From positions 12,710,001-12,774,000 of the forward strand of contig OZ281498.1 in the NCBI GenBank assembly GCA_965637545.1: a stretch of DNA of 64,000 nucleotides, written 5' to 3'. The translations under genes were made by a program, and so were the position numbers. The notes below the pieces were generated by a model. The model had not been told where the DNA came from. It saw nothing but the letters and a program-made list of their open reading frames with translations, and did not search any database. Shown here one piece after another: positions 49,501-64,000 of this stretch. The DNA is from Phallusia mammillata. Taxonomy: Eukaryota. Every line of letters starts with the position of its first letter. The stretch's first letter is position 1.

Positions 49501-52500
49501 TACCATTCATAAAGAGTAAATGCCACGCCAGATTTTCATTAGGCAATTATAAGTTCGACATATTTTTCCATTGGCAGATCATTAAAGCAAGCCACCAAAC
49601 CTAAGCTGTCACTCTAGCGGGGCTAAAAGATCATGCGCAAAACACATTAAACAAAAACTTACTTATATCCAAACTCTTTCGATTTCGGCCACGCTTAAAT
49701 GCTCGCGAAAGAGATCCCGACAGATGTTGGACCAATTTCTTTTTTCTTGCGTAGGATGGACCAAGAGATCCTCCGTTCGAAATGGGATCAATCTGGACAT
49801 CTTCACTGGAGGAAGAGTGAGTTCCTCCTGGAACCTGACCGAAGCAATGACGTGGGGAGACAGGAGATGGAGTCGGGATGAGAAGAGGATCCTGACTGTG
49901 TGAGGATGTGTTCGGCTCCGTCCCTGCATCCAAGGGAACAGTTTTTTTTCAATTGTAGAAATACAGAAAAAAACTAAATTATGTTCGACGTATTATTGTA
50001 AAATATATTTGTGTTTGTCGTAAGCAACAAATCGCTTAAACGGGTCGGGGACATGGAATAATTTAATAAAAGAAAACGATCGGCAGCAAATTTGCTTTAC
50101 ACCAACGTTTGAAGTAGGCAAAATCAGCATGTGTTTCTGGGTCAATATTGCTTAATATTGGTTCAATATCGCTTAACACACAAACAGATTAAAGTCCACC
50201 ACCACCCATAGGCAGAACGCGTCGCATTTACAAGGGCCTCATATTGAAATTGCATATTCAAACTAGGAAGTATTTGCTCGGTTTGGATTTGCTTCCCTAT
50301 TGTTTGCTAAGTTTCGATAGCCACTTATCGAAATTTCTGTTTGCAGTTAAGCAATTAGCTTTTTATTAGTTTCGCCTGTAAACAGAACTTTCACACGCCC
50401 CCGTGCAAGCAATTAATGCTCGTTGAGACAAACGTACCTGGCAAGTTGATTGATTTATGATTGGTAAAGCTTTCTTCCACTGAGACATGCATTGAACGAC
50501 GTTTTGAACTTTGAACTTGAACAGCTGACTGCCGCACCTGGATTTCAAAGAGTATTGCTAACGTTTGCAGTTCTAATTTGGGATAACGTGTAAGCACCGT
50601 AACATTTTTTTTAAATGAGCAACAAAGCTGATTTAAAAAATAAATAGGCGATTATTAAGCTTACCGCCTGTAACTCAGATTCAAGTTCCTTTATCTTGCG
50701 TTCGTTACAAACGAGTTCGTTTCTCAGTGAACTGACGACCTCGGTAAGATCCTGATGACGTCGTGATATGTCGTTACGCTCACGTGACAAGCGACTTCGT
50801 TCGTCATCGCCTTCTTTCATAATGTCTTCGCTTTCCTATAATTCAAACAGTTTAATTTAAAAAAATCAAATACAGGGTTGTAAGATGTTAAATTCTCAAC
50901 AGCAATCGAGTTTTGTTAAAAAACAGATGATTTACTTTCATTTGTAGTTCAAACTCTCGGATAAAATCGCGCAGTTGTTCCTCTTTATCTTCTATTGTCT
51001 TCTGCATCTCATGGATCTGATTGAGAAGTTCAGTCTTGTCTTGTTTCAGACGTTGCCGCTCGCTTTGCAGAGCTATCACACAAAAAGACAGAACAATGAA
51101 AACCTTGTCAGCCTTTTGTGTTTGCCAAACACAATAAGAGTTTGCACACAAGTGCATTGTTGACCTCAATCTACCAAATTCGGGGACGATTATCCTGGGG
51201 CATACCAGCGCTTTTAGTCTGCACTGACCTGGTTGGTGGTCAAATTGCTGTTTAAATAACAACAGATCACTGGGAACAATGGCGATTTCAAGGTAATCTG
51301 ATTTACCTTGTAACGAGTCCTTGTTCCGGATTTCGCTGTTACTGATTTGTTGCTTTAGATTTGCGATCTCCTTCAGCAGCTGCCGATTGCTTGAGCTCAG
51401 TGCCTTGTTGTCTTCCATCACTTTGTTCATTTCCCTTGTTTCTGCGCAAAGTCAACCACCCTATTGTAAATTTTGCGCGGAACTAGGTCAAATCCTTTAA
51501 ATCCCGTGCTTGCGAATGAAACATATAGTTTGAAAGTATAACCTGGGTGTTTCCCTTAGTCGCCTTCCAATCGCTTTTACTGCAGGAACTGTGAGTTAAT
51601 CTGTGCGATTTCCGACGATTTAGTGCCAAGCTATATTTTTGTGCTTCAGTTTTATAAACAAAGAAAACTCCAGCGTAAACAACAGATTTTCTGCACCACT
51701 CGCCTACAAAACTATTTAATAGCCTCAACCATATAGTTGGTTTAGCGTTTATTGTGTTGTGGACTCAAAATGAGAAAAAGGTCTCCACAGGCCCACATGT
51801 TGCACTTTCGACATGGTCTTTCTTAAATGTCAACATCCCTGCTCTATCAATAAATCGATGCCTACGTGTTGCTTTGATCAAATATTGTTTTACCTTGGCA
51901 ATGGGCACAGACGTCTTTCACCATCGATAACTCGCGCAGTTTTTGGTTTGTCATGTTCAGCTCAACGCGGAGGGTGTTCACTTCGTGATTGGCAGATTGA
52001 ATTGTGCCGTCTATATGCGTTGCCAGACGTTTATTGTTATCGACCATCTTTTTAAATTTTGTCTGCAAATATTGGCAGAGTAATGTTAAGCCTGCCCTGT
52101 TAAGCACAAAGGCGAGAGCAAGGTGTGTTTTAACGATAATGAGAACACTCAACATGGTTAAAAACATTTTAAATTTAACCCTGTAAGTTTTTTTTATAGA
52201 TAATTTTATAGATACCTGTGCATCCATAAGAAGACCACGCATCAACGTCAGTGAGGCATGTAAAGCGTCACGTTGCTGTGGTAACAAAGCGCTGTGGTCG
52301 AGAACAGAGTTGGTAAGATCAGACACGTTCTTCCGGTTTGTACTGTTCAGCGATGAGCTGAATATGAACTGCAGAATCTGTTCACTTAATGAGTCCAAAG
52401 ACTGAAGTGCTGTAAGAAAAAAAAGAGGGGATTTCGCACATTGCGTTCGTTTTGCAACACCAAAACAATGAATGAATTTGTTCAAACGGCTGTCTGCAAT

Positions 52501-60410: not shown

Positions 60411-62801
60411 ATGTTAAATTTGGAGGCAGATGAACTGATGCAAAAAAGACAAATGAGCATATCGATTGGTAAAAACGCCAACATTATAGGCAGTCCAATT
60501 GGAACAAACGGTGATGTCACGATTACCAATAACCGTAAGTAGTTGTTTGTTTTTAAATTGTGCCCCTAATTGATAACCGAAGTTTTTGGTGGTACGAATC
60601 CACTTTTTTGTCCTTTTGAAAACAGTGCTTGCTTGGTCGGTGAGTGCTGTGTGTTTCATAGCCCCTGTAGTTCTGGTCGTTGGGCAGTGAAACACTAGGT
60701 TATCGGTGTCTTGCACAGTGTCCTCACAACTGGGACAGAAAGGCTGGAAAATGTCCCCTTTATGTAGTTTAGGTGCAGTAAGACATGCAGTATATGATCG
60801 TATGCGATTCGCTACAACCCATTCATTTCGGGTTGGATTTGAAATTACATCCCCATCTCTTTAGGATGCCTTTTCACTAGTACTTGTTCCAATCTTCTTT
60901 TAGGTGTAAACGGCAATGTCTGTCGTTTTGTATATTGACTGCAACCATTAAACATTGTTTGCTAGCTGACGGACTAAACTTATTAAAAATCAAACACCAC
61001 CATCCAAATATAGATTTTCAGAATGTAGGTAAAATATTTTTTCAATGCAGCACAACATTTTGCTTTGCTGCGATATATCATCTCACAGTATGGCGCAAGT
61101 CTTATTAAAAGTAACTTGTGATTGGAAATTCACTAGTGTCAGGTTGTAGTGTTTGCATTGTTACAGAAGTACAATGAATCAAACCAACACCTTAATTATC
61201 GCCAATTACTGGCAATTTTTTTCAGATTATTTTGTCATTCAGTTTGCGATTTTATTATATTGGAACCAACTGTTTATTGTATTTTCAGCACTCAAAGTGT
61301 AGCTTAAGGTTCTTGGCAATAGGAACAACTATTCCGCACTATCAAACGGGATATTATTTTCTTGCATTTATGAATTGTTTAGATAATGGATCTCCACATC
61401 AGCCAAATATTCTGAGAGTCCCTATTCCTTATCCACAACGATCACAGATAGTTAGTCCAACATCTGATGACAGCAGTGACAGATCTTTATCGGATGTAAG
61501 CTCTGCATCTGATGATATATCTTTTACGTCTTTTCCCAAAGTGATGTTAAGTTACAATTGGAACTCTTCTTCAACTGTAAACAAGGTACAAAATATATTA
61601 TTATTCAGTTTTGACCACAGTGATATCTGTAGTGTTTTATATTTTACTCAAGTTCTGGTCTCCGAATGGAGTCGTGGGTTCGAATCCCACTTCTGACACG
61701 ATGTAGTGTTTTATTGCCAGGAGCCAAAAGCACAACCGCACAGCACGCGCGCGTAACTAGAGTGACCTCCGAGGTAGTCGAGAGGTACAAGAAAGACTAC
61801 GTAGTATAAAACCACTCAAGCGTATAAATACGTTGTAAATTCACTACAACATCTATTTTGTATCTTTTATTTTTATCGCTCACTAAAACCCCCTAATTAG
61901 TTGACACTATTGTTTAACAATAGCCTACACTTCTATCGCTTAACATCGAGCACATCCTAAAAATCCGCAATGATTTGGTCACATTTTGTGACTCATAAAC
62001 AACATATATATGTACAGATTTGTTTGATCAGTTTGTTTCACATCTTTTTTTGGCGTCAAACAGATTTACAAGAACTTGAGACGAGCAGGGTTTCAAGTTT
62101 GGTTGGATAAAAAAGATATGGAAGGTGATATGTACGAAAGTATGGAGAAAGCAGTAAGACAGTCCGACGTGGTTATTGCGTGTCTATCAGGGGATTATGA
62201 AAACAGTGCGAACGCCATGAAAGAAGCCAAACACGCTGCGGTGAAAAATAAACACATCATACCTATTCTTGTGGAGGAAAACTATCGTCCGAGCGGAGCT
62301 GTCGGTAAAATATGTTTTCAGTAGAGCGTTGAAGTTTAGTAACTTATTAAAACTTATTACATCGGTTATGGAGTATGTTAACTGCCATGTACTGTACTCT
62401 ACAACAAAACCGCAACTTGGTACGCATAAATTTTTTATAAAAACCATGGCGAGATTATCGTTTTATAGTGATATGTTTTTTTTTCTTTTCTAAACAGTAA
62501 AACATATATAACACAACAAAAGGTTTGACGGTTACGAAAGACCGCTTTTTTAACTATCTCAAAATCAAATGTAAACACCAGTTTCACTAGCAAGATCATT
62601 TACTACTAAATTACAACTTTAATTTTTACAGATTTTATTATATCTGGGACGATCTACATAGATTTTTGTTCGGGATCGTTTGATCGACAGATGAAGGCAC
62701 TTAAGACTCGACTTTCAATGTTAAAACCACGTCAAGTTGTCAATCGGTCAAAACCAAGCCAAACAAAACCTATGAAATCTTCAGTTTGCGTTGTTTTGTA
62801 A
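60411..62801 (+). CDS. TIR-domain (TIR_2-type) protein, about 245 aa, with an N-terminal Ile/Gly/Asn-rich pseudo-repeat and a C-terminal CaaX box (CVVL)
   Basis: Exons 60411-60534, 61383-61585, 62064-62304 and 62632-62801 total 738 nt, in frame, all GT-AG. TIR strings: VMLSYNW, GFQVWLD, MYESMEKAVRQSDVVIACLS, SANAMKEAKHA, IIPILVEENYRP, IYIDF. Exons 2-4 are well supported. Exon 1 rests on its ATG, a strong GTAAGT donor and matching phase. A 63-nt cassette exon at 60966-61028 is possible. Confidence 0.85.
60560..60850 (-). mobile_element. Degenerate 3' fragment of a non-LTR retrotransposon ORF2 in TIR-gene intron 1
   Basis: The minus frame reads PTRNEWVVANRIRSYTACLTAPKLHKG...PFCPSCEDTVQDTDNLVFHCP...KKW, resembling the W-x2-LNRLR...C-x2-C...H-x4-CP zinc-knuckle C-terminus of LINE ORF2 proteins. 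The His is replaced by Asn and there is an upstream stop. Confidence 0.6.
61628..61848 (-). mobile_element. Miniature LTR-retrotransposon derivative: 147-bp LTR, extended tRNA-Leu PBS and 13-bp LTR end
   Basis: 61702-61848 has TGTAGTG...CACTACA inverted ends and, on the minus strand, AATAAA just before the 3' end. It is followed on the minus strand by TCGTGTCAGAAGTGGGAT..., one mismatch from the Gypsy-type Leu PBS TGGTGTCAGAAGTGGGAT. A 13-bp repeat of the LTR end lies at 61628-61640. The flanks ATATC / ACATC look like a 5-bp TSD with one mismatch. Confidence 0.75.
61646..61698 (+). pseudogene. 5'-truncated, intronless copy of tRNA-Leu(CAA), part of the LTR element and not a functional tRNA gene
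   Basis: ACTCAAGTTCTGGTCTCCGAATGGAGTCGTGGGTTCGAATCCCACTTCTGACA matches the anticodon loop to 3' end of metazoan tRNA-Leu(CAA). The D-arm, A-box and 5' acceptor strand are absent. Confidence 0.85.
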
Positions 62802-63339
62802 AGAAAAGAAGAATATTCTTGCTAATAACGCAATACCTCTCACATACGACCGAATAAAGTGACTCTTCATATTTGACGCCTAAACAAATTTGTTTGTATT
62901 TGCTCTTTTATGCCCGTTAAGTTATTGTGTAGCGTATTATCTTTCTGGTGTACTAATATGACATGAAGTGGGCGTATCTCATTGTGTTGCAGTTTGCCGA
63001 AGCGCTTTTGTTTTGAGTGTAGGAGTTGAGTGTTTGTGGCAGATAATAAGCTACAATTGCATGTTTTTTTGTGGGGGTTGCTATCATGTTTTCTTGCTCA
63101 TTAGCTGAATTGCCCCAAATAATGATCTATACAAAAGTCGGTTCTAATAAAACTACATGTTTGGAAATAATTTTTGCATATCTCCTGTCTTACCCGACCT
63201 CGGAGATTTCAAATTCTGCTGATTAAAGTGAGCGGGACTCAAACGCAATATTTTTTTCCTACATCACACTTGGTAATTTATACCTAAACTACACAATTCG
63301 AGTTGTGATATTATAAATTTTGATATTGTATGTTTAAAG

Positions 63340-63574
63340 CAGCGGTCGGCAACTTTATCCCTACTGCGGACCGTTTTTGAAACTGAAATTTTATCGCGGA
63401 CCGGCTTTTAAAAAACTAGAATCATTTAACATGAAAAACGCTTAAATTAGTTGATCATCCCCGGGATACATGGACAAAATGATTTAAAGCATTTAACCTA
63501 AAAATTTATACGGCCCGGTAACGAACTCGTCGCGGACCGGTACCGGGCCGCGGCCCGGCGGTTGCCGACCACTG
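63340..63574. mobile_element. hAT-type MITE, 235 bp
   Basis: TIRs CAGCGGTCGGCAAC / GTTGCCGACCACTG (13/14) and a perfect 8-bp TSD GTTTAAAG (63332-63339 and 63575-63582). Confidence 0.93.
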
Positions 63575-63899
63575 GTTTAAAGGACTTCTACGTGTACGTG
63601 TATTTAATTGACGACGGAACGATCTTAATATGCGTCCGCTTGGTGTCAGTGCAGGTCATTTGTATTGGCCCATCTATTTTTTCTCTTCTTTTTTCCAAGA
63701 TATTTGTCGTACTTGATGGTTAACCACATTATAGTTCAGCGTAGTTTATTGTGAAATCAGACAATAACTTAAGGAAGTTTCTGTGATAATTGAAAATTAT
63801 AACCTGCTTTTAAGAACCAACAACGCAGAATAAATGGCTTGTTTAGTTGTTCATCTTTGTCTCTAGATAAGTAACAGAATAGGTACAAAAATCGACATT

Positions 63900-63981
63900 A
63901 TGAAGTGTCTTTATTTGCTTCTGATCACCACCGCTTTATTGTTTATGGAAACAAAGTCTCAGAACGCTGATGAAGAAGAAG
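63900..63981 (+). CDS. Probable first exon of a secreted protein (signal peptide MKCLYLLLITTALLFMETKSQNADEEE); the rest would lie beyond the window
   Basis: ATG, a basic residue, a hydrophobic core and a polar cleavage region, followed by a possible phase-1 donor G|GTTTGA. If unspliced, the frame stops 3 codons later. Confidence 0.5.
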
Positions 63982-64000
63982 GTTTGAAATAATAATGATT

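What the first reader, a model, noticed from the sequence alone, without database searches (positions are those of the whole stretch)
62715..62801. C-terminal CaaL box with an upstream basic patch on a TIR protein
Seen: ...LKPRQVVNRSKPSQTKPMKSSV-CVVL-stop (Cys codon 62787-62789, TAA 62799-62801). Established: C-aliphatic-aliphatic-Leu termini are GGTase-I substrates, and nearby Lys/Arg residues supply the second plasma-membrane signal, as in Rho/Rac/Rap GTPases. The motif, its exact terminal position and the basic linker together make chance unlikely.
Basis: partly seen in the sequence, partly recalled or inferred. Interest (0 to 1): 0.75.

Follow-up and report, generated by a model that had tools for sequence, protein, structure and literature searches.

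The report
Lipid-anchor tail on a TIR protein
A small invertebrate immune-type signalling protein (TIR domain) ends in the four-residue tag that cells use to attach a lipid anchor. The same tag sits on related TIR proteins from rotifers and molluscs to amphioxus, so it is probably a real way of tethering TIR signalling to membranes, and the papers I could search do not describe it.

Summary
A four-exon gene on the + strand (60411-62801) encodes a 245-aa protein. Residues 93-215 form a complete TIR domain, and a 30-residue acid-free tail ends ...MKSSV-CVVL-stop (Cys 62787-62789).

The best support is comparative. Of the 150 closest TIR relatives among 1.84 billion proteins, 31 have Cys at -4 (2.3 expected), and 29 of those end in a prenylation-type box (last residue L in 23). 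These 29 share K(-8)-S(-7)-[K/S/R](-6)-[S/T](-5) before the Cys, and the window tail, K-S-S-V-C-V-V-L, fits that motif. They include a coiled-coil/Death-TIR-TIR family in molluscs, annelids, a nemertean, a crinoid, a hemichordate and amphioxus, and single-TIR proteins in rotifers.

The genome has three prenyltransferase beta loci and ICMT.

Limits:
- No close ortholog exists in the library.
- The three tandem copies are too young to show selection.
- The tree does not place this TIR in any CaaL clade.
- The basic linker is diffuse (+2 in 10 residues, +5 in 20), not a Rac/K-Ras-type patch.

Verdict: very likely a real geranylgeranylation signal. It is a new variant of a known kind. I found no paper describing a natively prenylated TIR protein.

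The parts
60411..60534 (+). Coding exon 1 (41 codons plus 1 base). It starts at ATG 60411, or at the second in-frame ATG 60438. It holds the Ile/Gly-rich pseudo-repeat and ends at a GTAAGT donor (60535-60540).
   Evidence: Sequence read. There is an in-frame stop upstream. In tandem copy 2 a 1-nt deletion removes the first ATG from the frame but leaves the ATG equivalent to 60438 in frame. No Pfam match.
61383..61585 (+). Coding exon 2: a Ser/Asp-rich acidic linker and the first strand of the TIR domain (KVMLSYNW...).
   Evidence: AG acceptor at 61381-61382 in the phase needed by exon 1; GT donor at 61586-61587. No Pfam match on its own. It aligns to positions 2-17 of the TIR profile in the spliced product.
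62064..62304 (+). Coding exon 3: the core of the TIR domain.
   Evidence: PF13676 TIR_2 E 2.1e-16; PF01582 E 4e-5. AG at 62062-62063 and GT at 62305-62306. 2048 relatives at E<=1e-3.
62632..62801 (+). Terminal coding exon: the last strand and helix of the TIR domain (to 62708), then the tail, the CaaL box and the stop.
   Evidence: Its first 26 codons align to TIR profile positions 98-125.
62709..62786 (+). Linker of 26 residues, RLSMLKPRQVVNRSKPSQTKPMKSSV: 6 K/R, no D/E, rich in P/S/Q/T. Lys(-8) is at 62775-62777 and Ser(-7) at 62778-62780.
   Evidence: charge counts. (Ser at -7 in 28 of 29 and Lys at -8 in 18 of 29 CaaX-ending TIR relatives).
62787..62798 (+). CaaL box Cys-Val-Val-Leu, the predicted geranylgeranylation site (Cys242).
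   Evidence: It fits the box composition of the relatives: V/T/L at -3, L/I/V at -2, L at -1 in 23 of 29.
62799..62801 (+). TAA stop directly after the box.
62853..62858 (+). AATAAA polyadenylation-signal consensus, 52 nt after the stop.
   Evidence: It is identical in all three tandem copies.

Best explanation
The gene encodes a small cytosolic TIR-domain protein (245 aa, or 236 aa from the second Met). I propose that its C-terminal CVVL is a working CaaL box. Inferred steps: GGTase-I attaches a C20 geranylgeranyl group to Cys242; RCE1 removes -VVL; ICMT methylates the new carboxyl end. The lipid, together with a flexible, acid-free, mildly basic linker of about 26 residues, would hold the TIR domain at the cytosolic face of a membrane. 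There it could meet the TIR domains of receptors or other adaptors. This would be the job done in mammals by the myristoylated adaptor TRAM and the PIP2-binding adaptor MAL/TIRAP, reached by a different lipid. Which membrane is involved is open. The basic charge is too dilute to predict the plasma membrane, and endomembranes are as likely. Shown here: the motif, its exact terminal position, the gene model by homology, the recurrence of the same tail on related TIR proteins, and the presence of the enzyme genes. Inferred: lipidation, processing, membrane tethering and the adaptor role.
For: (1) The sequence ends ...K-S-S-V-C-V-V-L-stop. (2) The same exon carries the last strand and helix of the TIR domain, so a transcript with a complete TIR domain also carries the box unless a cryptic donor lies inside the exon. 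(3) Among the 150 best TIR relatives out of 1.84e9 proteins, 31 have Cys at -4 where 2.3 are expected (binomial 1.6e-25, though the sequences are not independent), and 29 end C-x-[L/I/V]-[L/I/M/V]. (4) These 29 share Ser(-7) in 28, Lys(-8) in 18, K/S/R at -6 and S/T at -5, while positions -14 to -10 vary. The window tail matches at -8, -7, -6, -4, -3, -2 and -1. (5) Carriers span several architectures and phyla. One group is coiled-coil/Death-TIR-TIR-CaaL in bivalves, gastropods, the annelid Dimorphilus, the nemertean Tubulanus, the crinoid Antedon, the hemichordate Saccoglossus and amphioxus. Others are single-TIR proteins in the rotifer Adineta, TIR-TIR in Rotaria, and ANK-TIR. On a TIR tree the label needs at least 4 changes. 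(6) Between tandem copies 1 and 2, the 24 nt coding K-S-S-x-C-V-V-L differ at 3 sites. Two are synonymous (Ser -6, Leu -1) and one is Val to Ile at the variable -5 position. (7) The genome has three prenyltransferase beta-subunit loci and an ICMT locus. (8) A run guessed to be RNA holds 0.46 of the sampled words of the last exon plus 3'UTR, against 0.07 of the whole 2.7-kb gene.
Against: No relative above 50% identity exists in the library, so conservation of the Cys in true orthologs could not be tested. The three tandem copies are about as alike in introns 1-2 and the 3'UTR as in the tail (96-97%), so their shared CVVL says little. The tree puts this TIR on a long branch with no supported CaaL-bearing clade. 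Only 3 of 68 short single-TIR relatives carry a box. More distant TIR paralogs in the same genome show no box in the open frame of their last TIR exon. The RNA label of the supporting run is a guess.
Confidence: 0.7

Rival explanations
1. The CVVL end is a neutral or chance C-terminus that is not used. The protein would be a soluble TIR-only protein, and its likeness to the tails of other TIR proteins would be coincidence.
For: A few C-a-a-L ends per proteome are expected by chance (1.9e-4 per protein). The tree does not link this TIR to a CaaL clade. Only 3 of 68 short single-TIR relatives have a box. Conservation among the paralogs is uninformative.
Against: By my own arithmetic from rough amino-acid frequencies (C, L and aliphatic), the joint match to K(-8), S(-7), [K/S/R](-6), C(-4), aliphatic(-2) and L(-1) has a chance of roughly 1e-6 per protein. 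The box is enriched more than tenfold in this TIR class. Both silent differences between copies 1 and 2 in the tail fall inside the motif.
Confidence: 0.12
2. The box is real sequence but is seldom or never at the end of the expressed protein. Either another last exon or an internal donor dominates, or this young tandem cluster is decaying and the copy is poorly expressed.
For: No reads could be laid. No run on record as RNA holds the stretch. One of the three copies is already broken: it has a stop in exon 2, a disrupted exon 3, and Lys(-8) changed to Asn. Copy 2 has lost the first ATG.
Against: The exon is needed for a complete TIR domain and joins in phase. The TIR core between copies 1 and 2 has pN/pS 0.13. 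AATAAA follows 52 nt after the stop in all copies. A run guessed to be RNA is enriched for the last exon and 3'UTR. The next gene starts only 1.1 kb downstream on the same strand.
Confidence: 0.1
3. The Cys is lipidated, but the purpose is not stable membrane anchoring of an adaptor. The prenyl group could serve as a handle for a lipid-binding chaperone or partner protein. Alternatively the enzyme could be FTase, or the protein could go only to endomembranes.
For: The basic charge is weak (2 K/R in the last 10 residues). From my own memory, not checked here: the Cdc42 tail reads KKSRRCVLL, and a nearby Ser in Rho-family tails regulates extraction by RhoGDI. The near-invariant Ser(-7) after Lys suggests regulation. 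Some relatives end in M, I, V or Q.
Against: X = Leu is the GGTase-I choice, and 23 of 29 relatives have it. From general knowledge, a C20 lipid alone gives stable membrane binding. Nothing in the data points to a chaperone.
Confidence: 0.08

Closest known systems
Hypervariable CaaL tails of Rho/Rap-family small GTPases (Cdc42, RhoA, Rap1, Rac1; tail sequences recalled from memory)
   Same: Cys at -4, an aliphatic a2 and a terminal Leu. A flexible, polar, basic stretch with a Ser just upstream. The K-S-x-x-C-V-x-L pattern resembles the Cdc42-type tail.
   Different: The cargo is a TIR domain, not a GTPase. The basic charge is far more dilute (2 K/R in 10 residues). No GDI-binding domain is present.
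Uncharacterised bilaterian coiled-coil/Death-TIR-TIR proteins ending K-K-S-K-S-C-a-a-L (for example Branchiostoma floridae XP_002608409.1, Aplysia californica XP_005098116.2, Saccoglossus kowalevskii XP_077861425.1, Tubulanus polymorphus XP_074660439.1)
   Same: A TIR_2-type TIR domain about 35-40% identical. The same C-terminal motif, with Lys(-8), Ser(-7), Cys(-4) and Leu(-1).
   Different: Those proteins are 900-1600 aa, with a Death domain, two TIR domains and a 100-230-residue linker before the box. The window protein has one TIR, no Death domain and a 30-residue tail. The tree gives no supported grouping.
Rotifer single-TIR proteins ending ...S-R-S-C-V-L-L (Adineta ricciae CAF1424241.1 and a Logan-derived relative)
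   Same: One TIR domain followed by a short tail (51-59 residues) and a CaaL box. They are among the 11 best single-domain matches to the window TIR.
   Different: They have a 240-residue helical N-terminal region unrelated to the window's 92-residue N-terminus, and only about 40% TIR identity.
Mammalian membrane-bound TIR sorting adaptors TRAM/TICAM2 (N-myristoyl) and MAL/TIRAP (PIP2-binding basic region); from general knowledge
   Same: A TIR domain held at a membrane by a lipid or lipid-binding signal placed outside the domain.
   Different: In those adaptors the signal is N-terminal and of another chemical kind. They are not detectably closer in sequence than any other TIR.
Prenylated innate-immune proteins GBP1/2/5 and the OAS1 p46 isoform (from general knowledge)
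   Same: An immune-pathway protein targeted to membranes by a C-terminal CaaX box.
   Different: The domains are unrelated (dynamin-like GTPase, oligoadenylate synthetase). There is no TIR.

Membership tests
CaaX prenylation substrates, GGTase-I class | Cys exactly four residues from the C-terminus, followed directly by the stop | tested here: met
   TGC at 62787-62789, then GTT GTT TTG TAA.
CaaX prenylation substrates, GGTase-I class | An aliphatic a2 residue and X = Leu (or Phe), which directs GGTase-I rather than FTase | tested here: met
   a1 = Val, a2 = Val, X = Leu. The selectivity rule is taken from general knowledge of CaaX prenyltransferases.
CaaX prenylation substrates, GGTase-I class | A flexible, polar, unstructured stretch of about 10 residues before the Cys | tested here: met
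   SQTKPMKSSV lies outside the TIR profile match, which ends at residue 215. This was judged by composition only. No disorder predictor or PrePS was run.
CaaX prenylation substrates, GGTase-I class | The organism encodes the enzymes (GGTase-I, plus ICMT for processing) | tested here: inconclusive
   There are three PF00432 beta-subunit loci (C8:10.79 Mb, C2:29.20 Mb, C2:9.45 Mb), as expected for FTase, GGTase-I and RabGGTase, and ICMT at C3:17.88 Mb. I did not determine which beta locus is GGTase-I.
CaaX prenylation substrates, GGTase-I class | Covalent geranylgeranyl thioether on the Cys | not testable with these tools
   Needs metabolic labelling or mass spectrometry.
Polybasic second signal for the plasma membrane (K-Ras4B, Rac1, RhoA type) | A dense cluster of about six or more Lys/Arg within about 10 residues of the Cys | tested here: not met
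   2 K/R in the 10 residues before Cys, 5 in 20, and none acidic. The CaaX-ending relatives average 2.45 in 10.
TIR domain (Pfam TIR_2, PF13676) | A profile match over the whole domain | tested here: met
   Exon 3 alone gives E 2.1e-16. The spliced product covers positions 2-125 of a 127-position profile built from the relatives (the window sequence was 1 of 167 rows in that profile).
Bilaterian Death-TIR-TIR-CaaL family | A Death domain N-terminal to the TIRs | tested here: not met
   No Pfam match in exons 1 and 2. No coding-looking + strand ORF lies between 55.4 and 60.4 kb.
Bilaterian Death-TIR-TIR-CaaL family | Two tandem TIR domains | tested here: not met
   There is a single TIR, residues 93-215.
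Bilaterian Death-TIR-TIR-CaaL family | A C-terminal K-S-[K/S]-[S/T]-C-a-a-L motif | tested here: met
   The window reads K-S-S-V-C-V-V-L. Position -5 is Val, as in Ylistrum XP_060072233.1, which ends ...QSSVCVLL.

The most novel reading that the evidence does not exclude
Invertebrate bilaterians may carry a class of geranylgeranyl-anchored TIR signalling proteins that I did not find described in the searchable literature. The class comprises the large coiled-coil/Death-TIR-TIR-CaaL proteins found from amphioxus to molluscs, and several small TIR-CaaL proteins, of which this gene is a lineage-specific short member. Their near-invariant Lys-Ser three residues before the Cys may act as a phosphorylation-controlled membrane on/off switch, as in Rho-family tails.
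Probability: 0.4. Interest if true: 0.72.

Novelty: new variant of a known kind. Interest (0 to 1): 0.6.

Why it matters
TIR adaptors must be brought to the membrane where receptors signal. The two mammalian solutions, myristoylation of TRAM and PIP2 binding by MAL, are textbook cases of sorting adaptors. A C-terminal geranylgeranyl anchor would be a third solution. The comparative data here suggest it is old, being shared by deuterostome and spiralian invertebrates, and that it recurs in several architectures. I found no paper that mentions it in four full-text searches; subscription journals are not covered.

It gives a simple, testable handle on the function of the large and mostly uncharacterised invertebrate TIR repertoires. 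One can ask where these proteins sit, whether statins or GGTase inhibitors blunt invertebrate TIR signalling, and whether the conserved Ser is a switch. For this gene alone the gain is modest: a well-supported annotation of a prenylation site.

Tried and rejected
- **Read evidence.** After that, no database, pattern, genome, paper or findings search received letters of 61665-61701. Local scripts that handled whole loci or the whole gene region (for example) did contain that intron stretch. Nothing from it was printed or interpreted.
- **Paralog conservation as evidence of selection.** Rejected. The tail is 96.5% identical between copies 1 and 2, while introns 1-2 are 96% and the 3'UTR 97.5%.
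- **Word search with the last exon.** No candidate was found.
- **PDB sequence search with exon 3.** No match.
- **Tree of 157 TIR domains.** The window lies on a long branch and joins no supported clade, so inheritance and convergence of the tail cannot be told apart.
- **Other TIR genes with a CaaL end in this genome.** Pattern scans for K-S-x-x-C-x-a-L-stop give no genome-wide excess (218 against 188 in the control). Only the tandem copies lie next to TIR exons. Four identical hits on C2 (KSSVCIIL-stop) sit in a 9-codon open frame and look like a repeat, not a gene. L032, L035, L037 and L040 are tails of non-TIR proteins.
- **More distant TIR paralogs.** None shows a box in the open frame of its last TIR exon, within the 1.5 kb of flank I held.
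- **A Death-TIR-TIR ortholog in this genome.** A search with the Tubulanus protein hit only the window gene, its copy and two other TIR exons.
- **Structure prediction.** Not run, because the spliced protein has no reference and I did not type long sequences.
Full report
**What is in the sequence.** The window is eukaryotic and intron-bearing. On the + strand four exons join in phase:
- 60411-60534 (GTAAGT donor)
- 61383-61585
- 62064-62304
- 62632-62801

They give a 245-codon reading frame. Exon 3 alone is TIR_2, PF13676, at E 2.1e-16. The spliced product aligns without gaps across both junctions to positions 2-125 of a 127-position TIR profile built from its relatives (residues 93-215, 152 bits). 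Homology therefore supports the gene model, although no reads could be laid.

The last exon encodes the final strand and helix of the TIR domain. It then runs on for 30 residues, RLSMLKPRQVVNRSKPSQTKPMKSSVCVVL, to a TAA at 62799-62801. An AATAAA follows at 62853-62858. The next gene on the same strand starts at 63899, so there is little room for further exons. Upstream, 44.8-55.2 kb holds a minus-strand gene with a SAM domain and coiled coils. No coding-looking + strand frames lie between 55.4 and 60.4 kb.

**Is it more than chance?** By composition a random end reads C-aliphatic-aliphatic-L about 1.9e-4 of the time. That allows a handful per proteome, so the motif alone is weak evidence.

The decisive evidence came from relatives. 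A full HMMER scan of 1.84 billion cluster representatives with exon 3 found 2048 TIR proteins at E<=1e-3. None was above 50% identity. Among the best 150, 31 have Cys at -4 where 2.3 are expected. The binomial probability is 1.6e-25, with the caveat that many belong to one family. Of these, 29 end C-x-[L/I/V]-[L/I/M/V], with Leu last in 23.

In those 29 tails, positions -14 to -10 vary freely. Closer to the Cys the picture changes:

| Position | Residues in the 29 tails |
|---|---|
| -9 | Lys in 12 |
| -8 | Lys in 18 |
| -7 | Ser in 28 |
| -6 | K, S or R in 26 |
| -5 | S or T in 19 |

The window reads K(-8) S(-7) S(-6) V(-5) C V V L. It matches every well-conserved position. One scallop protein even ends ...QSSVCVLL.

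**Who carries the tail.** Pfam scans and source look-ups show several architectures.
- The largest group is coiled-coil/Death-TIR-TIR, then a 100-230-residue polar linker, then K-K-S-K-S-C-a-a-L. It occurs in bivalves (Ylistrum, Mizuhopecten, Mercenaria, Dreissena, Mya), gastropods (Haliotis, Bulinus, Aplysia, Patella, Lottia), the annelid Dimorphilus, the nemertean Tubulanus, the crinoid Antedon, the hemichordate Saccoglossus and amphioxus. The box has therefore been kept since before protostomes and deuterostomes split.
- Single-TIR proteins of the rotifer Adineta (and a Logan-derived relative) end ...SRSCVLL or ...SRGCVLL after a 51-59-residue tail. They are among the 11 best single-domain matches to the window TIR.
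- A Rotaria TIR-TIR protein ends CVIL.
- An ankyrin-TIR protein ends CCLLL.

On a tree of 157 TIR domains the label 'last TIR before a CaaX end' needs 9 changes, at least 4 of them forced by well-supported branches. The association between this TIR class and a CaaL tail is therefore recurrent, not a single inherited quirk.

**What the comparison does not show.** The window TIR sits on a long branch and joins no supported clade. I cannot say whether its tail is inherited or convergent. Only 3 of 68 short single-TIR relatives have a box.

In the window's own genome only three tandem copies have it. These are the window gene, an intact copy 13 kb downstream (C5:12785349, ending ...KSSICVVL) and a broken copy 7 kb downstream (C5:12778940, ending ...NSSVCVVL). 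The broken copy has a stop in exon 2, a disrupted exon 3, and Lys(-8) changed to Asn.

These copies are young. The tail is 96.5% identical between copies 1 and 2, introns 1-2 are 96% and the 3'UTR 97.5%. Their shared CVVL is therefore not evidence of selection. The one hint is that the 24 nt coding the motif differ at three sites. Two are silent (Ser -6, Leu -1) and the third is Val to Ile at the variable -5 position. My rough estimate puts the chance of such a harmless set at about 0.05. The TIR core has pN/pS 0.13, so the gene is under constraint.

More distant TIR paralogs (about 30 TIR exon loci) show no box in the open frame of their last TIR exon, within the flanks I held.

**Machinery and expression.** The genome has three prenyltransferase beta-subunit loci, the number expected for FTase, GGTase-I and RabGGTase, and an ICMT locus. 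I did not establish which beta locus is GGTase-I.

The one expression hint comes from a small run guessed to be RNA. It holds 0.46 of the sampled words of the last exon plus 3'UTR, but only 0.07 of the whole 2.7-kb gene. A second run of the same study holds 0.25. That pattern fits exon-only contigs, but the RNA label is a guess.

**The basic patch.** The tail has 6 K/R and no acidic residue in 30 positions. Only 2 of them lie in the 10 residues before the Cys, and 5 in 20. It is at least as basic as the tails of the CaaX-ending relatives (mean net +1.8 in 10, +2.0 in 20) and clearly more basic than TIR relatives without a box (net +0.2 in 10). It is far from the dense blocks of Rac1, RhoA or K-Ras4B.

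From general knowledge, a geranylgeranylated protein with so little charge and no nearby palmitoylatable Cys may stay on endomembranes. Several relatives have a second Cys next to the box (CCVL, CCLLL, CCIVM), which suggests that the family uses varied second signals.

**Most likely mechanism.** I infer the following sequence:
- geranylgeranylation of Cys242 by GGTase-I;
- removal of -VVL and carboxyl methylation;
- tethering of the TIR domain to the cytosolic face of a membrane through a flexible linker of about 26 residues, where it can engage other TIR domains.

The profile consensus of the relatives has a Glu in helix C (S-x-N-C-x-x-E-A). The window keeps that Glu as S-A-N-A-M-K-E-A. From my own knowledge this is the position of the catalytic Glu of NAD-cleaving TIRs. 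An enzymatic role at the membrane is therefore not excluded, but it was not examined.

My confidence that the box is a used prenylation signal is about 0.7.

**Comparison with what is known.** The tail works like the hypervariable tails of Rho/Rap GTPases. Its K-S-x-x-C-V-x-L pattern is closest to the Cdc42 type (from memory). Functionally it parallels TRAM (myristoyl) and MAL/TIRAP (PIP2). It also parallels prenylated immune proteins such as GBP1/2/5 and OAS1 p46, but with a different domain or a different lipid.

The protein is not a member of the Death-TIR-TIR-CaaL family, because it has no Death domain and one TIR. It shares only that family's tail motif.

Four full-text searches combining TIR domain with CaaX, geranylgeranyl, prenylation or isoprenylation found no paper on a natively prenylated TIR protein. 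The hits use CAAX tags as experimental markers or discuss Ras. The papers that name the conserved invertebrate 'ecTIR-DC' families, and the one paper that names the amphioxus adaptors bbtTIRA and bbtTIRC, do not mention prenylation. The original classification paper is not in the searchable library, so I cannot rule out that it noted the motif.

**Verdict.** The motif is real, correctly placed and very probably functional. It is a new variant of a known kind: a CaaL-anchored TIR protein. The wider observation is the more interesting result and is directly testable. Many invertebrate TIR proteins, including a family conserved from amphioxus to molluscs, end in K-S-x-x-C-a-a-L.

Noticed in passing
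L002 (G000:C5:12783849-12787085) and L003 (G000:C5:12777440-12780586), just beyond the window's end: The gene is one of three tandem copies. Copy 2 is intact (a 235-aa frame) but has a 1-nt deletion that puts the first ATG out of frame, so it must start at the Met equivalent to window 60438. Copy 3 looks like a pseudogene: stop in exon 2, exon 3 disrupted, no exon 1 found.
   Followed up: partly
window 60411-60534 compared with L002:275-394: The N-terminal Ile/Gly-rich exon diverges much faster between copies (83% nucleotide identity with indels) than the TIR core exon (99%). Exon 2, the acidic Ser/Asp linker, is 91.6% identical.
   Followed up: no
P0001-P0150 tails (relatives, not the window): Ser at -7 is present in 28 of 29 CaaX-ending TIR relatives, usually after one or two Lys. 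This holds across different architectures. The pattern equals the Cdc42-type tail (from memory) and suggests a kinase site beside the lipid.
   Followed up: partly
G000:C2:5967183, 5974248, 6023494, 6175500 (+ strand): Four identical 27-mers read KSSVCIIL-stop. Their first 15 nt equal the window's tail codons, but the open frame is only 9 codons. They look like copies of a repeat, not a gene.
   Followed up: partly
L035 (G000:C4:21706069), L037 (C7:19042432), L040 (C2:24632379), L032 (C1:22664868): These are long terminal open frames of non-TIR proteins that also end K-S-x-x-C-a-a-L/F: ...VKKSKTCTIL, coiled coil ...KSKCCVIL, coiled coil ...SKSSTCVLL, and Pro-rich ...KSSACVIF. They are probably other prenylated proteins of this genome, not identified.
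   Followed up: no
window 61650-61700 (intron 2): A tRNA-like stretch lies in the intron.
   Followed up: no
window 63333-63581: A MITE-like element lies between this gene and the next. It has 21-nt terminal inverted repeats (90% complementary, 207 nt apart) and a GC-rich palindromic core.
   Followed up: partly
window 44807-52485, minus strand: ORFs with a SAM-domain-like stretch and long coiled coils suggest a liprin- or kazrin-like gene running opposite to the TIR gene.
   Followed up: no
window 63899-63990: Start of the next + strand gene, with a signal-peptide-like N-terminus (MKCLYLLLITTALLFMETKSQ...).
   Followed up: no
G000:C4:2.00-2.13 Mb and C6:25.596-25.608 Mb: Clusters of TIR_2 exons (at least 8 and 3 loci) show local expansions of TIR genes in this genome.
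   Followed up: no
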